Positions 16,501 to 30,390 of a stretch of DNA of 64,000 bases are shown one piece after another. The notes under the pieces are model-generated. The model saw only the letters and a program-made list of their open reading frames with translations. It did not search any database and was not told the DNA's origin. Location: contig OZ004609.1 in assembly GCA_963924565.1 (NCBI GenBank), positions 27,280,001-27,344,000 of the forward strand. Direction: 5' to 3'. A program made the translations under genes and the position numbers. The DNA is from Ascidiella aspersa. Its lineage: Eukaryota. Within the stretch, counting starts at the first letter, position 1, and every line of letters begins with the position of its first letter.

Positions 16501-19500
16501 TTTGATAACCTTTTACCATCGTTTTAAAAATCTAATTTAACGACGGTCTCACAATGTGCAATATAAAACCAAATAATTTATACAAAACCTTCCGCACTAT
16601 ATAATGAGTTTTACTCACAGATCATTGCAGATGCAGATGATAGGGCGCTGCAAGAAGTTCTTCGATTGCTTTTTCTTCTTTTTCTGTTTCTCCGGATTTT
16701 TGATGGGGTTGACTGCATTCAGCAAAACGTTGATGGCAGCCTGCGCGGATAAAACATGTCATTTGGGTATATTAGTTCACCTGAATTAAAAATGGCAAAT
16801 CTATGAAATAGAAGTATAAACTTAAACAAGAACAATACCAAAACGCATTGGCCTTGCCATTTGTTTTTTTATAGCGAAAGTCGAATACTCCGATCCACAG
16901 CGTCTCAACATTAAGTGGTTTAAATTATATCACACAGAAAATGAGTATTACATGAATTGATAAGTTGCCTGAATCAATGAGCTTTAAGAATTGTACCTGG
17001 GGCTGCACAACGAGTAATGTAAATCACACGGCATGTTAAACGTATTGTTGTCGCTGGTTACCTGAGGTGCACCGTCAATCTCGTCGATGATTAAACAGTT
17101 GGGTCTCTGATCTGTCCCAAGAACCGACTTCATCTGAGTCGTCTCCTCCAGTTTTCTCTTGAAAGCGTCCGCACTTCGGTCGTCACTGGAACGATGGGAG
17201 ACTGGCTTATGATTACGTCATACCACGTCACAAAAAGCTTAGACCAGAAATTGGAGTGAGCTCGAATACTTCGTTTTTAACACGAAAAGAATATATTACC
17301 TTTCCAAAATTATTAGGTGACTACAGATTTAACTTTAGGCAACGTACGCCCGTTTGGTATTTGTTCTATTAATATTATACATATATTATTGCAATATCTA
17401 CTTGACTAATATTTTGCACCGTACAGCTTTAAAAGACAAAGTAAACTTTAGACGTGCTTCCTATTCAATTATGAGAAAAGAGAGTGCTTTTTCGCAGAAT
17501 GTGATTTTTTGTACCTGGCGTTCATTTCCACAACGTGGTATCCGGCGTGTCGAGCGATGATGTGGGCTAAGGTAGTTTTTCCCAAGCCGGGAGCGCCACA
17601 GAGCAGCGCGAATTTGAAGTGGGGCCTCTTGAATTCATCCAGTTCCTAAAAATAAAATATTAGATGCATTAAAAACTCAATGTACGTTTGCAGTCGCCGG
17701 ATTGACTTTAGATCAGCGGTTTCAACCAGTGGACCATGGTTCACTGGTGGGCCATGGAAACTTTTTAGATGGGCCACAGACCAATTTAAAAAAGCTAAAT
17801 TTAATGAAGAATTTAGTTTCATTTGTGTCCCTATACCTAAATTTACAGGAATAATGGCTTGCAGGGGAATTAAGTAGAAATGTAAATTTATTGTTATATG
17901 CTCCGCTATAAGGTTTTTATAGTTTGTCCATTTAATAAAATTTATTGGGCCACAGAATTTTTGTGCAACGAAAATGGCCACGAAAGATAAAAAGGTTGAG
18001 AACTACTGCTTTAGATTATGTCAACACATTTTCTTAATAACTGTTGCATAATATAACGGTTTTAAAATATATATCTAATTAGGCAAGAATCACATAAACT
18101 CTACTTAGACCGATTAAAAAAAAAGACAACTTTTAGGTAAATTATGACCTCCTCTAGATCTTTAGACTTGAAGTTCTTGCCGAACTTTGCTTTAAGGATT
18201 TGTTGTTTTTCCTCTTTTTCCTTTTCCTCTTTGGACTTTGGTTTCTTTTTGGGCAGTTCCCGGCCGAACACGACGTGATCCCAAAGCTTCAGCCATTTCA
18301 GCAAAGAACGATTCACGCCCTACAAAGAAAATATTTGACTGTAAGGTTTATAGATAGAAATCGCTTTTCTGATGTAAACGAAGTTATAAATGGCGTTTTA
18401 GCAGCAGATACCAGCTGACCTCATCAGGGTTAGTAATTTAATTAAAAAGGGGAATGCGTTATCCAGCTTATATACTTAAAAGTATAAAATAAAAAACTAT
18501 AGATTAAAGTAAGAAATCTAGACGTCGCTGAAGTATGCGATAAGCTGTGACGCGACGGAGTCATCCGGCGCGTCGAACAACGAGCGTTTATGTGTTCTGC
18601 AACGGATGACCCCGTCGTCAGCGTTTTCAATCTAGTAATATGTTGCCTGATGGAGCTAACTCCATGATAAAGGTTCATAGTCTAGTTCCTTTCAACTAAA
18701 CAAATCCCACAAACTATTCGTGATACACGCTTTTCCGCTTCAAACATTTTTAAGTTTGGTGGTGTTTCAACACATTAACTATTTGTAAACACGGCAAGAG
18801 GATTTAAACTACACAATGAATGCACCGTGTTTACCAGTGCAGGCCATTTTACGTACAGATACAAAATTTTAAAAATTTGCACAAAACATTATTTACTTTT
18901 AAAAACTAAAACCTAAAACACAAGCGGTCCTCTGCTGCAAAGTTTCAATTCAACCTCCTGCCAGACTGCTACAGCTTTGGTACAGTGACAATTTGAAAAA
19001 GGTTTTTCTGGTGCACCCTGCATATACACTTTCGTAGGTTTCACGCTCATATCTTGCATTGCAAAAAAATCCAAAATTCAATGTCCCTTACATTAATCTG
19101 CCCATTCAACAAAAGTGTAATACCTCGTCACTGAGGAGGTGGGTGTAATGCGTGGGTGCAAACTTGTTGACCCATAATCCCTCTTGCGGGGTTTCCTCAC
19201 TGCTATAAATGCCCTCATCTTCTTGGCTGTCCAACTCTGTGGTAAGCGTGCTGTCTGACAGAATCTGATTGGCCAAAGTGCTGTCCAGTTGACCCAAAGA
19301 TGAACTGCGGACCTCGTCGGTTATGCGCTGGCTCTCAAGCATTGCCTTGCGTTGTTCCTGCAAATTAAATACAAAGTTTACAAAATCGGGGACTACTTTT
19401 TAGAAATAGGGCCTTATTTAAATAGCAAATGTAAAAAACAAAAGGAACATATAGTGTTTACAATATAATTAGCGATTCTAAAACAATATGCTAAAGTTTA

Positions 19501-22500: not shown

Positions 22501-24462
22501 TTGCAAGTTTTCATTAGCCTACATTGCCGATAATAAAAAATAAAAAAAATGCTAAAAAATATATGTCCAATATTTGTGAATACATTTTCCGTTTGTCCGC
22601 GACGCACTTGGCAACCTTCCACGGCACAACGGTAAAGAAGCGCTAATCTATATTTGAAAAGACAGCGTCTAAACGTAATCAAACCGAATGGAGAAGGATA
22701 ATTCACGCGAAGCGCGAAAATTTTTCGCACTTACGTAGTTAAAATAGTTAAAAAGTATTTGAAATGGAATCGTGCCTATAGTTTGTCAAAGAGGCGGCGG
22801 GCCGGATCCGGCCCGCGGGCCGTAGGTTGCCGACCCCTGCACTAGACCTTACATGTTTGTGCCCCCAAGCCTAGACCGGATATTTACCAAAGACTTAATA
22901 ACCAACTCTTCCTGTACATTAAATCACTCTATATGCTGTCAGATGTGCTAAAGTCTTTACTGGTATTTTCAGCCTCGACATACATTTCATAAAAAATTGA
23001 AATTCATTAGCCGTGTAAACCTGAGTCAGCAAATGCGCTGAATTTAGTTGCACCAAATTTCAAATTAAAAATATTTGCGGGGATGTTTATGCAGCCTAAA
23101 ATTGCATTGCTGTAGTATAGCTTCTGCTAAAATTTGAGGGGTTGTAATGTTATCTTTAAAATATGCAGAGCTGAAAATTAAGTACTAGCCTGAAAATCCA
23201 TATGTGTAAGTTAATTTTGCACATTTGAGCTTTTTTTTTTTACTGCTGAAGGAATTTTAAGCTCTTTTGCACAAAATGAGCGGCTATGACTGCGAATGAA
23301 CGGGCAACTGCACTACAGATTAAAACACAAGCCAACTAAAAAGTCGCGTATACAGTTTTTAGTAGTAATTAGTTTACAGCCATACAAATTAGAGGAATAA
23401 CTTCAATACAGCCGCACACATTTAGACTGCTTAGACATGATCGCCCACAATATCCATAGTTTCAAATGTAGTCTGCCCCGAGGTTAAAAAGTTTGGAATA
23501 AATCGCCTACCATTTGCACTCTTAGCTCCTGTCGTACCCAATCATTTCACGAAAATTGCTGTGAAATACGTTTAGCTTTGAAAACTTCAGTACTGCTTAC
23601 GACTTTTGATAGTAATTGATCCATTAGGGAAGTATGGAAAATCTCAACGAGGTCTTCCGGGTGCGAAAAAGAAAATTTGAGTTGATCGGGTGAACAAAAG
23701 TTCAGCGCACCCCACTTGTGTAACAATAGGAATATTGGGGTATATGTTGAGTCAAATAAAAAAACTTGTGTGTGCACTTGCTATACTTTCCACAGTGGGC
23801 AATTCATTAACAACCATGCAGTTCTTTAAAAAAAATGTTAGTACGGCAATTTTAGGATTTCTAAAAATGTCGTGCAAAATACAAAGTTTTTTAATCTGGT
23901 TATCAATCAATGGTAAACACTGTTAGGCCTTATTAGGTATATATACAAAGCAATTGGTTGTTTAGGGGTCAAGGTTCGACTTTTTGTCCTGTATTTACTT
24001 TAACATAACTGAGTTTTTGGCGCTCTTTCACTATTGTACGTGAAAAGTTATGCAAAAAAGAAAAAAATAAGAATACTGCATACCACAACGCATATTGTTT
24101 GGGTTAGGGTGCGGGTTAGAGTTTGGGTGAGGGTGGGTCAAGTAATATTATGTTTATTATTAATAATAACTTGACCCACCCTCAACCAAATGCTAACCCG
24201 AACCCTAACCCAAACAAAATGCGTTGTGGTATGCGGCATTTGAAGAAATTTTTTTCTTTTTTTTATTAATTTTTACGTACAATAGTGAAAGAGCGCCGAG
24301 TTTTTTTATTAGTCTAAATATTGATAAGTTACGAAATAAATTGAATAGCGGATTGTCGTTGACTGAAAAATTCAACTCACCTTCTAGCTCGTCCAACGCA
24401 TCTAGATCATCTGCATACTCTGTTTCATACAAATCATATTCATCAAAACCGAAGTCAGCCAT
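1529..24462 (-). CDS. CHTF18: Chromosome transmission fidelity protein 18 (Ctf18-RFC large subunit, AAA+ ATPase), 22 coding exons, ~968 aa
   Basis: Exons in transcript order: 24381-24462, 21724-21897, 21556-21646, 20728-20840, 20215-20354, 19957-20049, 19124-19357, 18149-18319, 17515-17645, 17062-17185, 16619-16740, 16158-16251, 15667-15791, 15025-15129, 14447-14579, 12586-12810, 11759-11908, 10862-10992, 9263-9407, 8505-8639, 6133-6199, 1529-1650. All introns GT-AG, phases match, total 2907 nt. Motifs: LWVNKFAP..Y..LLSDE, NRSLLKWLKLWD, Walker A GAPGLGKT, EMNASDDR, Walker B LIIDEIDG, RPIICICNDLY, GNDIRACINTLQF, C-terminal WFRYNEGFSNAIRR. Confidence 0.96.
3760..5370. promoter_or_regulatory. 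CpG-rich promoter/enhancer-like island in the last intron of CHTF18
   Basis: TGACGTCA at 4024, 5280 and 5293; minus-strand TATAAA at 5238-5243; GGCGGG at 5244; CCAAT at ~5138; NRF1-like GCGCATGCG at ~5068; TTACGTAA at 5100; very high CpG density. Confidence 0.55.
6661..6899. repeat. Foldback (inverted-repeat) element, ~100-bp arms
   Basis: agcaaatatt..tttagactttcc..caaagtcagtcattaat..ttctagtcattt..gagaaatat.tttcgcca is mirrored at 6793-6899. Confidence 0.85.
11026..11392. mobile_element. MITE with CAAGTC subterminal repeats
   Basis: TIR CAGTGTTGTAAT / ATTACAATACTG; many CAAGTC units at both ends. An inverted relic of similar repeats lies at ~60125-60180. Confidence 0.75.
12811..12832 (-). 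repeat. (CAA)n microsatellite forming the 3' splice site of CHTF18 exon 16
   Basis: Minus strand tgcaacaacaacaacaacaacaacag|GGC. Confidence 0.9.
12859..13224. mobile_element. Dispersed repeat family (hAT-like, ccgatac motifs); relatives at ~25165-25365 and ~27260-27305
   Basis: TAGGG...CCCTA ends. 12876-12941 aligns by eye with 25181-25252 (tttattg..caatacccga.attt...aaaagtt..cgcg....c.atac.aaatga.gtca). Confidence 0.55.
15611..15643 (-). pseudogene. U6 snRNA fragment with A-rich tail, in CHTF18 intron 13
   Basis: Minus strand TGGCCCCTGCACAAGGATGACACGCAAAATCGT matches the conserved U6 core (TGGCCCCTGCGCAAGGATGACACGCAAAWTCGT) with one clear mismatch. Followed by an A-rich tract (15570-15607). 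The U6 5' part and ACAGAGA box are missing or degraded. Confidence 0.85.
17714..18008. mobile_element. hAT MITE
   Basis: Ends CAGCGGTTTCAACC / GGTTGAGAACTACTG; perfect TSD CTTTAGAT; repeated GGGCCAC motifs. Confidence 0.9.
18392..18810 (-). mobile_element. Penelope-like element relic (GIY-YIG-like fragment plus decayed hammerhead)
   Basis: Minus-frame SSIRQH...SSVAEH resembles PLE endonuclease; followed by CTGATGA-GGTCAGC..GCTGCT-AAAACGCC. Confidence 0.4.
22177..22839. mobile_element. hAT (Buster/Charlie-type) MITE, young
   Basis: 16-bp perfect TIRs CAGGGGTCGGCAACCT / AGGTTGCCGACCCCTG; perfect 8-bp TSD CACTAGAC; subterminal GCGGGCCG motifs. Confidence 0.93.
24017..24300. repeat. ~284-bp foldback palindrome with telomere-like GGGTTAGGG units, CHTF18 intron 1
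   Basis: Left arm ggcgctctttcactattgtacg...gcataccacaacgca...gggttagggt...gagggtgggtcaagt is mirrored in reverse complement on the right, around a short AT loop at ~24150-24160. Confidence 0.9.
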
Positions 24463-24562
24463 GTTCAGTTGCACCAGTTTAATTAACAGGTTTATTTTGA
24501 AATATAAAATAGAATGCACTCCAGTTGTTCCTTATTAATATTAATAGAAAACAGCTTTACGA

Positions 24563-24574: not shown

Positions 24575-26287
24575 TGAGCATAAAATTAAAATAGGCAGTC
24601 AAGCATGTCGGAATAGCAGCATAAAAATTAAAAAATTACAATCGTCACCTACCGGTTTTTATCGAAATTTTGCCAATGTCAACGCATTTTTTTTCGGATT
24701 TTAGGCTATTAGACTGGATTCAGTTGTAAATAGCGTACAATTTCGCTCGAGAACCATGAATGCTTTTTAGGAATAATTGTTTAAAGACGTCACATCAAGA
24801 CGTAAATTGGCGACATCATCCATAAAAAAGGTCATATCCCAAACAAAAATCCTGGATCCGCCCCTGATCAATACCTTTATAATAATATGCCTCAGCCCTA
24901 ATTTAGCCTATTTAGTAAAATATAGTTAACTAGTGAACTAAAATCTATAGCACCTTTATAGTAGCCTTATTGTGGCTCTCTGGATGGTTGGCCATCCTTG
25001 GTATGTGTTTATGGCATACGGGTTCTTAACCAGCAATGGGTTTTCTCCATGAGTGTCCCGAATAGTCGAAATTCAAGTTCTGTTTGAGTTTAATAAAAAC
25101 TGATTAAAAAAACTTTAATGTAACAAATAGGCCATGTCTTTACCTCAGCTGGAATGTGTTTAAACTCCGATCCGTGCTATTTTATTGGGATACCAATACC
25201 CGACATTTTGATAAAAAGTTATCGCGTTTTGATCCGATACAAAATGATGTCATTACTGAAGTCAAATAAGCAAAACGCACTAATACCACCAGAGTATCGG
25301 ACAAGTACCGAAACTATCCCTTGGCAGAGGAAATCCGGCTCCGATCCGATATTATCGAACCGTCCTAGCTGCAGCAGCCCACTCAGAACCATGTAACGCA
25401 GGATGGTAAACTTTTTCTCTAAGATTTGTAGCAATGGAGCAAGTTCTTAAAATATGACTCTATACCTGCTGACCTGTCTACTGTATTCACATAGCGAAAT
25501 TACAAAAAAACAAGTTTGGCCTATTGCCTATATAACCAGATAGTTCTTAGACTTATATCGTAAAACAATAAAAAGTTCATAACGATTTTTTTAGAGAAAT
25601 CGCTAAAGGGAGTGTCTTAGCAAGTTCAGTGGAATTTAAAATCATTCCGCAATTTCTTCGATCGCTGTATTTTAGGTTTAACAACAACACTTGTCAGACC
25701 GGGAAATAACCTCGGTGCGATGTGTCGTGTTTTGCCATCAACAGTTTCCGCTTTGTCGCGGGAATAGCGTAGCATCAACAATAAGAGCATTGCGCCGGCT
25801 AACTAGACTGTAGTTAAATGAGATACAGGGTAAGTATAGCAGTTACGCTTCGGCAGACTTTGTACCGTTACGCCAGCATAGGTCAGTACAAGAATGGCAG
25901 CAGGTAGGGTGACAGGCAACTAAGTAGGACCTAACGGCAGGGCTACAAAAACATAGTAGACGTTAGAGCTGTCATCGCCCTTTGAAATGTTATTGTTGTT
26001 ATGCGACATTAAACGTGTTTCTCAATACGACAGGAGAAAATATGTGCAACCAACTATATAAGCGAGACAAACGACATGTTTGTTCATTCTATCATACGAA
26101 AACAAATACTGATCGAATAATCATTTCAAAAAGTTGTTATTTAATTGAACGTGATATTTTCAATTCCAGTCGAAACCGCCATTATCTCGAACAAGAAGCT
26201 TATAAACAACGGTGTGAAAATCAGTTTGTTTGTACCTAAACGAATCCACTGAGCATTAAATCCGTAGCTCTACGGTTGAATTACAGC

Positions 26288-29013
26288 ATGGCTTTGCCCA
26301 GCCTTCAAGCAAGATGCTTCTTAACCATAGCCCAGAGGCTTTTGGCGAATTCGAGCGGCGAAACGCTCGGAAGGATCTCTTTGGTGAAAAAATCATGCTT
26401 CGCTACGCAACAAGCAAAGGTTAGAAAAAGCCCATTCATTCGCTAAAAAATGTTTTTAGCAATAGTGACTTTATTTAGACTTGTGTGTTGGTCCATGCAA
26501 GACTTATAGCTTGGTTGTCTTGTTTGCTACTCAAAATCGGTAAAAAGTAAAATGCGTTTTTTGTTCACTTTATACTGAATACAATACCATACGAAAATTC
26601 AAGTGAAAAACTAAAGCTGCATAACTAGTTGGGTATTTGCACGCACATGGTACAGTTCACTAAATACTGTGAAATTGTCAAATATCAGGTGATTCATTCG
26701 CGCAACTTTGCCGTTTCCTCTTCGCGAGCCAACGACAGCACCACTGTTGACCAAAATCAGACGAGGAAGAACGGCAACACCGGGCACGACAAGCAGAAAA
26801 AGTGGTGGTCGATGAGTTTTGAAACAAAAGTCTTCAGCTCGATTCTGTTCGGTCTCGTATCCTATTTCGTCACGACTTACCTGGACAAAAGGCACGCGCG
26901 AAAGGAAATCCAACTGGAACTGATCACGAAACAGGTAATTTGCCCGATCGATTGCAGTTCACGTTGTACGACTTGAGTTACATCAGGTACACGACACGTG
27001 AAACAGTAGATCGTTAGGTTTTTTGTTCATATTTGGAAATTATGCACTCCTGGTAGGACGAATTCAACTGAAATCAGCTTTTTATTCCTCCGAATGCAGT
27101 GTAATTTTTCTTATAAGATCGCATAAACCCCGATGAGTGCTTTACTACTTTTATAGGTTTAAAAGATTTAGTGTACAACATGTAGAAAAAAAAGCACGTG
27201 TATACTTACTCGTAGAGATCTTCAATAATTGCGAATCTGGGCCCATTTTCGATGCTAAATGGTACTATCGGTACTCGCCCGATAGTATCAGTATACCGAT
27301 CTGGAATACTCACATGCATTTTTTTTAAGGTTTGGTTTGGGTGACCGCTAAGTAGTTTTAAGAGACCGCAAGTGTTTCATTTAAATACCAAAAAGTTGCA
27401 AGTCCAAAATTTGGGAATCGCTGGAGAAATTTGGGGGACCGTTTCGGTGCCCTAAAACACCTTAAAAAAAACACTGCTTACATGAAATACGAATTGAAAA
27501 AGTATTGTGTTTAACAACTGGAGGCAACTAAATTTTGAACGCTAAATCTAATTTGGCGTATAGTTACAAAATAAAAACTATATAGTCACTAAGTTTCACG
27601 ACGGTGACTTCTGCCAATAACCTTATAAACTGGTTTATCCAAAAGTGTAACGGTATAGTTGTCGTTTAGATCCGCGATCTCTACGGACCCCTCTACGGCA
27701 ACCGTCTAGTCGAGGATGCCAGCTTCAAGGGGGTTGTGGGCGAGCACAAGCATTTGAGGGACTACCTGAAAAGAGCCGAAGAAGAGAAGAACGCGGAAAT
27801 GATCCAGAAATGGAGGTCCTTCGTCTGGAACGTTCTCTACCCACTGGACAAGGAGGTATATATGACTTGTACGATTGCCAATTTGCGACCAGGCTATTTG
27901 TCTTGATTGGAGGACAATGCTTTTATAGGATTTGTTTCACAATAAAAAATATTTTTGGCTGAAAATGCCCATACAAAATTTAATACTGCTTTAGGCCTAC
28001 AACTGTAACGAAATCTGATAAATCTATCAAATTTACTGAATTTATTACATTTTAACTAATAATTACCACCCGTACTTAAACATTTTTTTGTCTTAGGCAC
28101 AACAGCTGATCTGTGAAAACGCGCACTTGGTTGTCAACCACGAGTTTCCTGGCGAATTTAAACTCTTCCTTACTCACTTTGCCCGACTGCAGTTCGTCAT
28201 GGAGGTTGGCGAAAAAGTTTACTTTAGGAAGAATGACATAAAAGCGTAATAGGCATTCTGTGCAAATATTGCTCAGGTGGTAAATTTTAAACAATAGTTT
28301 GTGTTGTTGTAAAATTCCGCTACAGAGCAAACTGTAATGTGCGTTTACCTTCGATTTTTCACCCAGTAAATTTCCCCTTCGTGGTTCTAAGTTTAAAACT
28401 AAACTCCTCGTAAATAAAAAGAAGACAAAGCTTATATAAACAAGGATATTAGTTGGACATTAAATGCTAAAGCTGAAACACTTTAGGAAGAAAGGAATCT
28501 TCCGCAGACAATAAAATGTAAAAGAAAGATTCTTGTTTTCGTATCAGATGATCTAAGACTGTTTATAAAAAGATAAAACATAAAATAATTTCTTAAAATT
28601 TACAGAAATTTACAGAAACATGACGATGCCTTATAGGCGAAATATATACTGTATTTTTGTAAATGTTGAGAAATGATTTTATGTGTCATATGTTTATATA
28701 AACAGTTTTAGATCAAATGCTAAAGAAATTAATTCGCAATTTTTATGTACCTAAACTCGCTTTTAAGTGGATGTTTTCTAATTTGCAGGAGTGGAAGGGA
28801 AAGGACGGCAATCTGGAGCCACCCAAGGCCTACAGAGCGGTCGACTTCCTTGAGAGAACCAACGCCTCGGGTCAGGCTGGCCTCTCGCAGTTGTTCGAGC
28901 ATGTCGAGTCAAGGTGCGAGGAATTGCGCGCTACTCAGCAGCAGCTTGTCGTGGAACTCAGCTCGGCTGAACACGATCATATTCTGACCGGACTCTTCAA
29001 GAAGTTTCGATGA
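26288..29013 (+). CDS. Uncharacterised ~298-aa protein: mitochondrial presequence-like N-terminus, one TM helix, helical domain
   Basis: Exons 26288-26419, 26689-26934, 27670-27855, 28097-28204, 28789-29013; GT-AG, all phase 0, open throughout. N-terminus MALPSLQARCFLTIAQRLLANSS...HSRNFAVSSSR is R/S/L/A-rich and acid-poor. TM: FSSILFGLVSYFVTTYL. Then KQIRDLYGPLY...WRSFVWNVLYPLDKEAQQLICENAHLV...FLTH...W. Confidence 0.85.
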
Positions 29014-30390
29014 GCTTCCTTTGACTAAGAATTGAATTCGCGCGTTGACCGAAACGTTATTGGCTCGACTGATTGCAAGGCAAAGTTTTTTTCCGTTTAA
29101 CGGCGTATTGTTTTTTCTTGTGACATATATGCGTGCCTTTGCTCATATGAAAACGCATACGCAGGCATCCGTGCCATTTTTAGAGCACTTTTTGTTTATT
29201 TTATCTAAGCAATGCCCCATTCATTCAATGAGGCAAATTATCCCCAAGAGGTATTTTGACCATGATAAGAGGCGCTTATCTTTTACTAATACCAAAGTGC
29301 TTCCAACTGTTAACAGTTTATTTAAATCTAAGTTAATATGGCAATTTGGTTGTGTTTATTTATTAGCTGATAACGGTTATTCATTTTTAAATTAAAAAGT
29401 GGTAATTTAAATCAAAACTGTCCTTGGCAAGGTTAATGATTCCGAAAAGTTGACGAACCAATGCTTTTATGAAATATAAGAGTCAAATGCTATATTGTGC
29501 ACTCGCTGCAAGATTGTTTTGAACCCGTCTAATCTCCGTTCATGCAAACTTTAATTACATCGATTTGTCGTATGTCAGCGTTCAACGCAACTTTATCGTT
29601 TTGTTTCTGACGAGCACTTATATTTTCTCTTTATGTCGTAAATCCAATTTCGCGCTTGTACCCGTCATTGGCCAGACGGCATGTTGTTAATGTTAAAAAC
29701 AAAAACGACTTTTATCTTAAACGAATTTACAAAATGTTTATTTTATGTGTAACTAGAAACACGAGTGGGTAGTTTTGAAAAAAGCACGCACGAAAGCGTT
29801 TATTATAAAAACGCAATCAAAATACAGTCTTGTGCGAGAAAAAAAGTACACGTTGTAAAATAGCACGCGAAAAACGCCGAATTTTAAAATGGGTGGTAAT
29901 TAAATTTTTGATATCAAAATTATGCCGGACTTGTTACGCAAAAAAAAACAGTTTAAGCAAGCTCGATTAAACAAAGATATGTAGCCGGACAGATGTTTTA
30001 TATTAGTGTCATAAGGATACTTTTGACACTTTGGCACTAATACTTGCGCTGTATATATTTTAAAGGGAAGAACGATTTTGCTTAGCAGGAAATTTCGATC
30101 AGGCAGGACTGCTAGTATACACGACAGATATGCTGAGCTGAGTCAGGTATTTTTTTAAAGGGTTTTGCTGAGATGTGATTTAGAACCATTTTCGACTTAA
30201 TCGAGCTAAATGTATTTGGCGAGTCATATCAATAACAAAATATGACCTATACCATAGCACTATACCGCAAATAGGCCTGAATGCGAATGAAAACACAAAC
30301 AACAGAAGTTGGCACATCTCAAACGAATGGCAGTAATACAGCGAAAAAGAAAATAAGTCAAGCAAGAAAATAAAGAGGGTCACTTGGGGT

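What the first reader, a model, noticed from the sequence alone, without database searches (positions are those of the whole stretch)
26288..29013. Candidate horizontally acquired gene retargeted to mitochondria
Seen: a clean 5-exon, ~298-aa ORF whose four introns are all phase 0. Exon 1 and the start of exon 2 look like a mitochondrial presequence (RNF/AVSSSR cleavage-like), followed by one TM helix and the pattern KQIRDLYGPLY-x~35-WR.FV..VL.PL....Q.LI.ENAHLV....FP....FL.H.......W-x~25-L..HV.....EL...Q..L. I do not recognise this as a vertebrate or insect family. From memory it follows a widespread bacterial (also algal) hypothetical single-pass family (RLERVNxQLxxxYGPL...WRxWMxxVFMPxN...IxxxAxL...HV). 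Inference: a bacterial gene domesticated by gaining introns and a presequence, giving an unstudied mitochondrial membrane protein placed head-to-head with CHTF18.
Basis: partly seen in the sequence, partly recalled or inferred. Interest (0 to 1): 0.75.

Follow-up and report, generated by a model that had tools for sequence, protein, structure and literature searches.

The report
Bacterial-derived membrane protein gene in tunicate
A sea-squirt gene with four introns encodes a small membrane protein whose only relatives outside sea squirts and lancelets are rare, unstudied bacterial proteins, so an early chordate ancestor most likely took it from bacteria.

Summary
The five-exon, 298-codon model is real in the sequence: all introns are GT..AG and phase 0. 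Exons 2-5 are collinear with uncharacterised proteins of Ciona, Clavelina and Styela, so the genome is a tunicate, not an insect. Exon boundaries recur in a second species. The recalled bacterial family exists. A prokaryote-only profile picks exons 3, 4 and 2 as the three best of 2149 open stretches in the window. That family is in no library tested. It occurs in about 1% of sampled genomes but across nine bacterial phyla, and it often sits beside TIR-TM, SIR2, SLATT or STAND genes. Named eukaryotic relatives are only tunicates and amphioxus, and they form one clade at 100/100 support. One ancient bacterium-to-chordate transfer is therefore the best reading. The donor is unresolved. Mitochondrial targeting rests on composition alone. 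Exon 1 has no homology support, and the sampled RNA gave no reads on any exon. Other agents of this scan noted further transfer candidates in this genome, but not this gene.

The parts
26288..26419 (+). Putative exon 1: ATG plus 44 codons, basic and acid-poor (6 K+R, 1 D+E). This is the proposed start of a targeting presequence.
   Evidence: Open frame, GT donor at 26420 and composition. No similarity to any orthologue. 0 RNA reads in the sample. Unverified.
26647..26649 (+). Alternative in-frame ATG, 14 codons upstream of the exon-2 acceptor. It would give a 4-exon model with a shorter N-terminus.
   Evidence: The ORF 26629..26976 carries an in-frame M at codon 7. The second species' contig has the same arrangement (ATG at L097:1025, 10 codons before its acceptor).
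26689..26934 (+). Exon 2 (82 codons): RNFA motif, hydrophilic linker, conserved WW juxtamembrane stretch, transmembrane helix, basic stretch.
   Evidence: P0001 residues 75-130; L097 1130-1306, 37.5% identity; prokaryote HMM positions 7-42, E 8.7e-3.
26830..26886 (+). Single hydrophobic helix, VFSSILFGLVSYFVTTYLD.
   Evidence: Best 19-residue Kyte-Doolittle window, 1.40. It aligns with the N-terminal membrane helix of the bacterial proteins.
27670..27855 (+). Exon 3 (62 codons): IRDLYGPLY motif and WRSFVWNVLYPL. This is the most conserved part.
   Evidence: 16 hits, best Ciona at 68% identity; 72.6% identity to L097 6127-6312, same length; prokaryote HMM 43-104, E 9.3e-7.
28097..28204 (+). Exon 4 (36 codons): ENAHLV...FP...FLTH.
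   Evidence: 72% identity to L097 6408-6515, same length; HMM 105-145, E 6.9e-4.
28789..29013 (+). Exon 5 (74 codons plus TGA): a chordate-specific insert followed by the C-terminal helix EHV...LRATQQQL.
   Evidence: (P0001 226-300). The prokaryote HMM match here is collinear but only E 6.1.
17472..17645 (-). Walker-A exon of the neighbouring CHTF18 gene.
   Evidence: Motif scan. phmmer against PDB gives CHTF18 at E 1.4e-15, ahead of yeast Ctf18 (3.4e-9) and RFC1 chains at about 1e-6.
24205..24519 (-). Open stretch that probably holds the first coding exon of CHTF18 (acidic MADFGFDEYD... start). It faces away from the gene studied.
   Evidence: ORF list. The assignment rests on position and strand only and was not tested by homology.

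Best explanation
This is an intact, single-copy tunicate gene for a single-pass membrane protein of about 298 residues. From its hydrophobic helix to its C-terminus it descends from an uncharacterised prokaryotic family. Members of that family are 175-210 residues long, with an N-terminal membrane anchor, a basic stretch, an invariant LYGPL motif and a domain of about 140 residues with no obvious catalytic residues. The most likely history is one transfer from a bacterium into the chordate stem lineage or earlier. This was followed by gain of phase-0 introns inside the domain, addition of a 50-95-residue N-terminal extension, and an insert of roughly 15-25 residues before the last helix. The gene was then retained in tunicates, expanded in amphioxus, and not found in vertebrates. 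Shown here: the homology, the narrow eukaryotic range among named hits, the single eukaryotic clade, the integration among host genes, and exon conservation in a second species. Inferred: in tunicates the extension is a cleavable mitochondrial presequence and the moderately hydrophobic helix anchors the protein in a mitochondrial membrane (about 0.5). Also inferred: the conserved domain is a non-enzymatic, membrane-tethered interaction or sensing module rather than an enzyme, because only structural-type residues (L, Y, G, P, W) are invariant. In bacteria the gene travels in variable accessory regions. One actinobacterial subclade keeps it on the same strand beside a TIR-TM gene, so its ancestral role was probably as a membrane partner in a conflict or defence module (about 0.35).
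For: Homology: the eukaryote profile A1 reaches Actinomadura P0058 at E 1.4e-5, plus unnamed bacterial-type proteins at 1e-9 to 1e-14. The 49-row alignment is collinear with LYGPL invariant. A prokaryote-only HMM hits exons 3, 4 and 2 as the top 3 of 2149 stretches, abutting at profile positions 42/43 and 104/105. Prokaryotic range: 67 loci in nine bacterial phyla and one archaeal MAG; at least 370 proteins, capped; 3 Streptomyces plasmids. The family is rare: 4 of 301 Planctomycetota, 5 of 301 Actinomycetota and 1 of 301 Gammaproteobacteria, seeds included. Eukaryotic range: an exhaustive phmmer with exon 3 gave 16 hits of 1.84e9, all of the chordate type. Of 40 profile hits, the 21 named eukaryotic ones are 4 tunicate and 17 Branchiostoma. 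Tree: eukaryotes form one clade at 100/100, amphioxus at 100/97. Integration: four introns and a CHTF18 neighbour; DNA contigs of two further runs cover the locus. Context: TIR_2 in 8 of 42 close same-strand neighbours; a TIR gene cluster in 10 loci; PADLOC TIR-TM at 1e-63 to 1e-89 in 4 of 7 tested; SIR2 and SLATT neighbours. N-terminus: among 26 eukaryotic proteins, the tunicate rows and most rows of the main amphioxus clade have K+R 5-9 and D+E 0-2 in the first 40 residues. An R-x-[FLY]-[AS] pattern lies in the N-terminal extension before the helix in the window, L097, C. intestinalis, Styela P0003 and P0019.
Against: There is no transcript evidence. The one RNA run gave 0 reads on any exon, though only about 6% of it was read. 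Exon 1 has no similarity to any orthologue, and an in-frame ATG at 26647 offers another start. The hydrophobic moment of the N-terminus is matched by 53% of shuffles. No targeting predictor or structure prediction was available. Eukaryotic breadth was tested only through protein collections: one single-exon exhaustive search and two word-seeded searches. The donor is unresolved: the join to the marine Planctomycetota/Gammaproteobacteria group is only 82/58, and a clade with Alphaproteobacteria is not rejected (p-AU 0.455). The tree is unrooted, so the direction of transfer rests on distribution alone. The defence reading is guilt by association: the family itself matches nothing significant in PADLOC (best weak hit E 0.003), and neighbours differ outside one actinobacterial subclade.
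Confidence: 0.65

Rival explanations
1. The gene is an ancient eukaryotic gene, for example from the alphaproteobacterial ancestor of mitochondria. It was inherited vertically and lost in almost every lineage except tunicates and amphioxus.
For: Alphaproteobacterial members exist (L017, L024, L030) and share the NAHL motif. Holding eukaryotes and Alphaproteobacteria together costs only 1.27 log-likelihood units, p-AU 0.455. The product may be mitochondrial.
Against: It needs losses in essentially all other eukaryotes, because named eukaryotic hits are only tunicates and Branchiostoma. The family is rare and patchy even in bacteria. The free tree places the eukaryotes elsewhere.
Confidence: 0.07
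2. The gene is of bacterial origin but the eukaryotic range is wider than I saw (other marine invertebrates, algae). The transfer would then be older, or it reached chordates through another eukaryote, or it happened more than once.
For: An intronless copy without the N-terminal extension lies on a compact eukaryotic contig of unknown taxon (L098). The long-branch group P0048-P0052 is unnamed. In the Atlas, the nearest clusters are 88-95% bacterial, with the remainder not stated.
Against: All 31 eukaryote-type rows, including the unnamed ones, fall in one clade at 100/100, and the unnamed ones sit on the tunicate side. No named non-chordate eukaryote appeared. The chordate-type pattern LYGPLYG[NH][RC] gave 0 relatives in 185,579 prokaryote genomes and none in viral contigs.
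Confidence: 0.15
3. The protein is not mitochondrial. The basic N-terminal tail plus helix acts as a type II or signal-anchor for the ER or secretory pathway, or for the mitochondrial outer membrane.
For: Amphipathicity is no better than shuffles. Basic residues flank both sides of the helix. Some amphioxus paralogues (P0042-P0044) lack a basic N-terminal region (K+R 2 in the first 40 residues), and P0043 and P0044 have no extension at all, with a more hydrophobic helix (Kyte-Doolittle 2.0-2.3) starting at residue 13 as in bacteria. L098 also lacks the extension.
Against: The first 40 residues are basic and nearly free of acidic residues in the tunicate proteins and in most of the main amphioxus clade. 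The helix is only moderately hydrophobic in tunicates (0.9-1.7). An R-x-[FLY]-[AS] pattern recurs before the helix in five sequences. There is no uninterrupted hydrophobic core typical of signal peptides in exon 1 (my reading).
Confidence: 0.35
4. Exon 1 is not part of the gene. Translation starts at the in-frame ATG at 26647 in a longer first exon, giving a 4-exon model of about 268 codons.
For: There is no similarity for exon 1 and there are no reads. A second species has an in-frame ATG in the same place relative to the acceptor.
Against: Ciona proteins P0001 and P0017 have about 53 residues before their R-x-Y/L-S site. That matches exon 1 plus the start of exon 2 (49 residues) better than the 20 residues of the short model. 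Exon 1 has a clean GT donor and phase 0. The one listed exon-1 polymorphism is synonymous by my reading.
Confidence: 0.25
5. The locus is a silent or decaying relic.
For: 0 RNA reads on exons in the sampled run.
Against: All five exons are open with canonical splice sites. Exons 3 and 4 are 72% identical to another species while intron lengths differ. 4 of the 5 listed exonic differences between individuals are synonymous (read). Intron-free contigs of about 1-1.7 kb encode full-length homologues, consistent with transcripts in related species.
Confidence: 0.05

Closest known systems
Horizontally acquired tunicate genes such as cellulose synthase CesA and GH6-1, and the recent Ciona and amphioxus transfer surveys (PMC13390645; PMC13350694)
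   Same: A gene of bacterial type sits in host chromosomes with spliceosomal introns and has orthologues across tunicates. These match two of the three contaminant-exclusion criteria used in PMC13390645 (section 6, read).
   Different: It is not among the eight Ciona groups or the eleven amphioxus genes named in the sections I read. The Ciona screen dropped any gene with a deuterostome hit (Branchiostoma floridae was in its database) among its top five and required E < 1e-25, so it would have excluded this gene. This family is shared by tunicates and amphioxus, has no known enzymatic function, and carries an added N-terminal extension. I did not see the supplementary tables of either paper.
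Pfam DUF4760 (PF15956)
   Same: It has the same general build: an N-terminal membrane helix followed by a domain of about 140 residues, in small bacterial proteins of unknown function. UniRef and the Atlas auto-label some members of the present family 'DUF4760 domain-containing'.
   Different: No Pfam hit to DUF4760 in 15 family members, even at E 1-10. The model does not hit the family gene in 5 genomes that hold it. hhalign of three family alignments against 14 true DUF4760 proteins gives probability 0.3-3.4%, over the membrane helix only.
Bacterial TIR-TM (PADLOC model PDLC03016) and SIR2 defence-candidate genes
   Same: In 10 actinobacterial loci the family gene lies on the same strand next to a TIR gene. 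4 of 7 tested neighbours match TIR-TM at 1e-63 to 1e-89, and one Bacteroidota neighbour matches Aga_SIR2 at 9.5e-23.
   Different: The family itself matches nothing significant in PADLOC, with weak hits only at E 0.003-0.016. The pairing is confined to one subclade, and no defence function has been tested. The chordate genes have no such neighbour in this window.

Membership tests
Unnamed prokaryotic single-pass 'QLRDLYGPL' family | Membrane helix followed by a basic stretch, directly upstream of the motif | tested here: met
   Exon 2 aligns to prokaryote HMM positions 7-42. The helix scores 1.40. The 49-row alignment is collinear.
Unnamed prokaryotic single-pass 'QLRDLYGPL' family | Invariant LYGPL motif | tested here: met
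   L133 Y134 G135 P136 L137 are the only invariant columns across 49 eukaryotic and prokaryotic rows. The window has IRDLYGPLY.
Unnamed prokaryotic single-pass 'QLRDLYGPL' family | Collinear match of the whole C-terminal domain (W..W...P, [HN]A[HD]L, final helix) | tested here: met
   Exons 3 and 4 match at E 9.3e-7 and 6.9e-4, abutting in the profile. Exon 5 is collinear but only E 6.1. W177, P187, L202 and L273 are nearly invariant.
Pfam DUF4760 (PF15956) | Match to the family HMM above 25 bits | tested here: not met
   No hit in 8 eukaryotic and 7 other members. No hit on the family gene in 5 genomes.
Pfam DUF4760 (PF15956) | Profile-profile similarity beyond the membrane helix | tested here: not met
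   hhalign probability 0.3-3.4%, with 5-22 aligned columns.
Horizontally transferred animal gene | Lies in a host chromosome among host genes and has introns (not a contaminant) | tested here: met
   Four GT..AG introns. CHTF18 is the neighbour. The locus is on contig C3 at 27.3 Mb. Two other DNA runs cover it.
Horizontally transferred animal gene | Orthologues in related host species | tested here: met
   Ciona (two species), Clavelina, Styela (two copies), Branchiostoma (three species and hybrids). Genomic contig L097 has the same exon 3 and exon 4 lengths and boundaries.
Horizontally transferred animal gene | Absent from other animals and eukaryotes but present in diverse prokaryotes | tested here: inconclusive
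   Not found outside tunicates and amphioxus. However, only one single-exon exhaustive search and word-seeded profile searches were possible. Prokaryote breadth is shown.
Horizontally transferred animal gene | Transcribed and spliced in the host | tested here: inconclusive
   0 reads on exons, with about 6% of one RNA run read. Homologues on intron-free contigs of about 1-1.7 kb suggest transcripts in other species.
Presequence-targeted mitochondrial membrane protein | Basic, acid-poor N-terminus | tested here: met
   Exon 1 has 6 K+R and 1 D+E. The tunicate proteins and most of the main amphioxus clade have K+R 5-9 and D+E 0-2 in the first 40 residues.
Presequence-targeted mitochondrial membrane protein | Amphipathic helix | tested here: inconclusive
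   Maximum hydrophobic moment 0.37, reached by 53% of shuffles. Only 2 of 11 extension-bearing N-termini beat 95% of shuffles.
Presequence-targeted mitochondrial membrane protein | Processing-peptidase-type R-x-[FLY]-[AS] site (motif recalled from general knowledge) | tested here: met
   RNFA in the window, RYLS in C. intestinalis, RLYS in Styela. RRLS in L097. RSYS in P0019. This is a pattern only; cleavage was not tested.
Presequence-targeted mitochondrial membrane protein | Experimental or predictor-based localisation | not testable with these tools
Known anti-phage defence protein (PADLOC-DB) | Significant match to a PADLOC model | tested here: not met
   Of the 9 proteins scanned, only weak hits at E 0.003-0.016 for three (P0015, L006, L004). 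Only the neighbours match.

The most novel reading that the evidence does not exclude
A membrane protein from bacterial conflict or defence islands, where it partners with TIR-TM and SIR2 genes, entered the genome of the last common chordate ancestor. It has since been kept for over half a billion years in both invertebrate chordate lineages. In tunicates it was sent to mitochondria by a newly added presequence. In amphioxus it multiplied into a family with different targeting, possibly tied to that animal's expanded innate immunity. In vertebrates it was lost. It would be a rare example of a stem-chordate bacterial gene acquisition and of an immune-island protein re-used in an organelle.
Probability: 0.2. 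Interest if true: 0.8.

Novelty: new member of a known kind. Interest (0 to 1): 0.6.

Why it matters
Well-supported bacterial-to-animal transfers are few, and in chordates the accepted cases are mostly tunicate-only enzymes such as cellulose synthase. This gene is shared by tunicates and amphioxus as one clade and was not found in vertebrates. That would date a bacterial acquisition to the chordate stem and add a clean case of vertebrate loss. It would also show the steps by which a foreign gene is adopted: phase-0 introns inside the old domain, and an N-terminal extension added in front of the old membrane anchor. Both the bacterial and the chordate proteins are entirely unstudied. The bacterial pairing with TIR-TM genes and the amphioxus expansion each suggest a simple experiment. 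Recent transfer screens would have missed this family by design, because it has an amphioxus hit and only weak bacterial E-values.

Tried and rejected
Family libraries. Pfam and NCBIfam scanned exon by exon gave nothing meaningful. Pfam on 8 eukaryotic and 7 other members gave only sub-threshold noise. PADLOC and PHROGs on 9 members gave nothing significant. A PDB profile search gave no hit better than E 0.17.

DUF4760. The auto-label was followed up and rejected.

Insect host. This was rejected by the Ciona, Clavelina and Styela hits.

Viral route. No relatives were found in IMG/VR with either profile. No phage record matched.

Donor identification. The nearest prokaryotic group is weakly supported, and the AU test could not exclude Alphaproteobacteria. 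I name no donor.

Amphipathic-helix test. It was not discriminating.

Transcript evidence. RNA reads fell only in the bins holding the two intronic repeats.

A first PDB query for CHTF18 with ORF 19106-19363 found nothing. The Walker-A exon did. A paper search for 'TIR-TM' with 'anti-phage' returned 0 papers.

Rows dropped before the trees: 7 of 67 loci. L005, L022, L062, L063 and L064 are truncated or frameshifted. L015 and L050 were mis-called by my crude ORF finder. For the careful tree a further 21 redundant actinobacterial rows were dropped. My neighbour analysis used a simple longest-ORF gene caller, which recovered the family gene in only 42 of 67 loci. Neighbour counts are therefore lower bounds and may include false ORFs in high-GC genomes.
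Full report
WHAT IS THERE. That is 44+82+62+36+74 codons plus a stop. All four introns are GT..AG and all are phase 0. Exon GC is 49-56% against 30-37% in the introns, similar to a CHTF18 exon at 50%. Every search with window sequence was made exon by exon, and whole-length analyses used natural orthologues.

THE GENE IS REAL AND THE HOST IS A TUNICATE. An exhaustive phmmer of exon 3 against 1.84 billion representative proteins gave only 16 hits. The best was a 300-residue protein at 68% identity. That protein and its relatives are named as uncharacterised proteins of Ciona intestinalis, C. savignyi, Clavelina lepadiformis, Styela clava and Branchiostoma belcheri. tblastn of five tunicate proteins and one unnamed tunicate-like protein (P0019) onto the window finds exons 2, 3, 4 and 5 in order. 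For example, P0001 residues 75-130, 130-202, 192-227 and 226-300 match at E 1e-11 to 1e-27. Exon 3 is single-copy in the 308.6-Mb assembly.

A 10-kb metagenome contig of another tunicate (L097, 97% identical to fragment P0002) has the same four exons. Its exon 3 is 186 nt and its exon 4 is 108 nt, the same lengths as here. They are 72.6% and 72% identical in protein to the window's, and the intron lengths are quite different. Six short database 'proteins' are prokaryote-style ORF calls that run through the same exon-3 donor. These are P0002, P0004, P0005, P0008, P0012 and P0013, and each ends its similarity at ...PLD[KQE][EQK] followed by V. By my reading, 4 of the 5 listed exonic differences between sequenced individuals are synonymous.

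WHAT IS NOT SUPPORTED. Exon 1 has no similarity to any orthologue or to L097. An in-frame ATG at 26647, 14 codons upstream of the exon-2 acceptor, offers a shorter four-exon model. L097 has an ATG in the corresponding place. The one RNA run of this species gave 279 reads on the 3.9-kb stretch. All fell in the bins holding the two intronic repeats, and exon depth was 0. Only about 6% of the run was read, and the stretch laid contains no other gene's exon to serve as a yardstick. So transcription in this species, and exon 1 in particular, remain open. In favour of exon 1, the Ciona proteins have about 53 residues before their R-x-Y/L-S site, against 49 in the five-exon model.

THE BACTERIAL FAMILY EXISTS. 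A profile of 12 eukaryotic members reached Actinomadura chibensis P0058 (E 1.4e-5) and unnamed proteins of 175-209 residues at 1e-9 to 1e-14. The named ones among the 120 listed are all Actinomycetota and all 'hypothetical'.

A pattern scan of 185,579 prokaryotic species returned 67 loci. Of these, 47 are Actinomycetota and 20 are from Cyanobacteriota, Planctomycetota, Pseudomonadota (Gamma and Alpha), Gemmatimonadota, Chloroflexota, Acidobacteriota, Desulfobacterota, Bacteroidota and one Methanocellaceae MAG. A 49-row alignment of both kingdoms is collinear from the membrane helix to the C-terminus, with LYGPL invariant.

As a direct test without eukaryotic intermediates, I built an HMM from the 60 prokaryotic rows only. 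I searched it against all 2149 open six-frame stretches of the window. The three best hits are exon 3 (E 9.3e-7, profile 43-104), exon 4 (6.9e-4, 105-145) and exon 2 (8.7e-3, 7-42). Exon 5 is collinear but not significant (E 6.1). The introns therefore cut the bacterial-type domain at profile positions 42/43 and 104/105.

THE FAMILY IS UNNAMED. There is no Pfam, NCBIfam, PADLOC or PHROGs match and no PDB relative. UniRef and the ESM Atlas auto-label some members 'DUF4760'. However, the DUF4760 model does not hit the gene in five genomes that carry it. hhalign against 14 genuine DUF4760 proteins gives 0.3-3.4% probability.

DISTRIBUTION AND TREE. The family is rare in prokaryotes. With the mixed profile it was found in 4 of 301 Planctomycetota, 5 of 301 Actinomycetota and 1 of 301 Gammaproteobacteria, each count including the seed genome. 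It also sits on three linear Streptomyces plasmids, one of them near an IS5 transposase. It was not found in phage or IMG/VR collections.

Among eukaryotes, the named hits are 4 tunicate and 17 Branchiostoma proteins of 40 profile hits. The chordate-type pattern LYGPLYG[NH][RC] found no prokaryotic relative. In a careful ML tree (72 rows, 212 columns), all 31 eukaryote-type rows form one clade at 100/100 on a stem of 1.15 substitutions per site. Amphioxus is supported at 100/97 and the tunicate side at 97/87. A quick tree with 93 rows agrees. The clade sits next to a marine Planctomycetota/Gammaproteobacteria group, but only at 82/58. An AU test does not reject an alphaproteobacterial sister (p 0.455). 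I conclude one origin for the chordate genes, direction bacteria to chordate on distributional grounds, and an unresolved donor. Because tunicates are closer to vertebrates than amphioxus is (established phylogeny), presence in both implies presence in the chordate ancestor and loss in vertebrates, provided the absence from vertebrates is real.

WHAT WAS ADDED IN CHORDATES. Bacterial proteins start 1-11 residues before the membrane helix. The tunicate proteins and most of the main amphioxus clade have 50-95 extra residues there, whose first 40 hold 5-9 K+R and 0-2 D+E. An R-x-[FLY]-[AS] pattern lies within this extension, before the helix, in the window (RNFA), L097 (RRLS), C. intestinalis (RYLS), Styela (RLYS) and P0019 (RSYS). 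The helix is less hydrophobic (0.9-1.7) than in bacteria (1.7-2.25). However, my hydrophobic-moment test was uninformative, and no predictor or structure tool was available. Some amphioxus paralogues differ: P0043 and P0044 have no extension at all, P0042 has a non-basic one, and an intronless copy on an unidentified compact eukaryotic contig (L098) also lacks the extension. Targeting is therefore not uniform. I put mitochondrial localisation of the tunicate protein at about 0.5.

HOW IT MAY WORK. Only L, Y, G, P and W positions are invariant across kingdoms. I therefore read the domain as a non-catalytic, membrane-tethered module. This is an inference.

In bacteria the neighbours vary, but conflict-system domains recur. 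Among 42 close same-strand neighbours, TIR_2 occurs in 8, TPR_12 in 5, AAA_16 in 4 and NB-ARC in 3. A TIR gene lies on the same strand, upstream or downstream, in 10 actinobacterial loci that largely form one subclade. Four of seven tested neighbours match PADLOC's TIR-TM model at 1e-63 to 1e-89. A Bacteroidota neighbour is an Aga_SIR2-type protein, and a Neptunomonas neighbour is a SLATT/DUF4231 protein. This suggests an ancestral role as a membrane partner in a defence module. The family itself matches nothing significant in PADLOC, and nothing has been tested.

LITERATURE. I read the abstract, outline and screening section of Tamura et al. 2026 (PMC13390645), and the abstract, outline and first results section of Cao et al. 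2026 (PMC13350694). Neither names this family. The Ciona screen excluded genes with a deuterostome hit (B. floridae was in its database) in the top five. The three unannotated amphioxus genes carry LOC numbers other than ours. A full-text search for six identifiers of the family returned 0 papers. 'DUF4760' occurs in one unrelated paper, which I saw as a search listing only. Supplementary tables were closed and may list more candidates.

VERDICT. The horizontal-transfer reading is largely supported, but it is re-dated to an old event shared with amphioxus. Mitochondrial retargeting is plausible but untested. Exon 1 and expression are unverified. Notes from other agents of this scan on the same genome also call it a tunicate and report other transfer candidates. 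None concerns this gene.

Noticed in passing
window 27319-27460 (intron 2) and about 28480-28620 (intron 4): Two very high-copy repeats. Summed contig word-depth is about 450,000 and 27,000, against about 45 for the flanks in the same DNA run. Many loose ends begin at 27319/27320, and these are the only places with RNA reads. They look like short dispersed (MITE- or SINE-like) elements.
   Followed up: no
window 26285-26287: An AG lies two bases before the ATG of exon 1 (..gaattacag|c ATG). It could be a spliced-leader trans-splice acceptor, as is common in tunicates (my recollection). No read evidence.
   Followed up: no
L098 2943-3608 (JGI metagenome contig Ga0115100_10251597): An intronless 221-residue homologue of the chordate type (LYGPLYGNR). 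It starts directly at the membrane helix and sits between two other eukaryote-looking ORFs on a gene-dense 4.9-kb contig. The taxon is unknown. Related fragments (L099-L101, P0048-P0052) appear to have short introns (roughly 80-90 nt between matched pieces in L100).
   Followed up: partly
Branchiostoma proteins P0015, P0024, P0025 and P0036, P0038, P0046: Amphioxus paralogues cluster. Three B. belcheri copies lie on one 1.8-Mb contig, and three B. lanceolatum copies with close gene numbers lie on one 34.6-Mb contig. P0043 and P0044 carry a long extra C-terminal tail. P0040 has a precomputed tetraspanin (PF00335) hit, perhaps a fused gene model.
   Followed up: no
L055, L057, L065, L012, L038 and five more actinobacterial loci: A recurrent two-gene module: the family gene plus a TIR-TM gene on the same strand, with gene order swapped in some loci. 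Nocardia loci instead have a same-strand neighbour of about 800 residues. Micromonospora loci have an alpha/beta-hydrolase plus a neighbour of 1300-1400 residues whose N-terminus looks like a ParA-type ATPase (my reading, not tested).
   Followed up: partly
L067 (Methanocellaceae MAG) and L068 (Bacteroidota MAG): Two closely related, very divergent family members (tip-to-tip distance about 0.5, on a stem of 3.4) are assigned to an archaeon and a bacterium. This is either recent inter-domain transfer or a binning error.
   Followed up: no
window 25600-29500, run X4: A run labelled as a different organism (B, another study) holds 21% of the sampled words. Its low-depth contigs (about 3x) lie over exon 1 and exon 5 with few differences, so it is a close relative or the same species under another label.
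   Followed up: no
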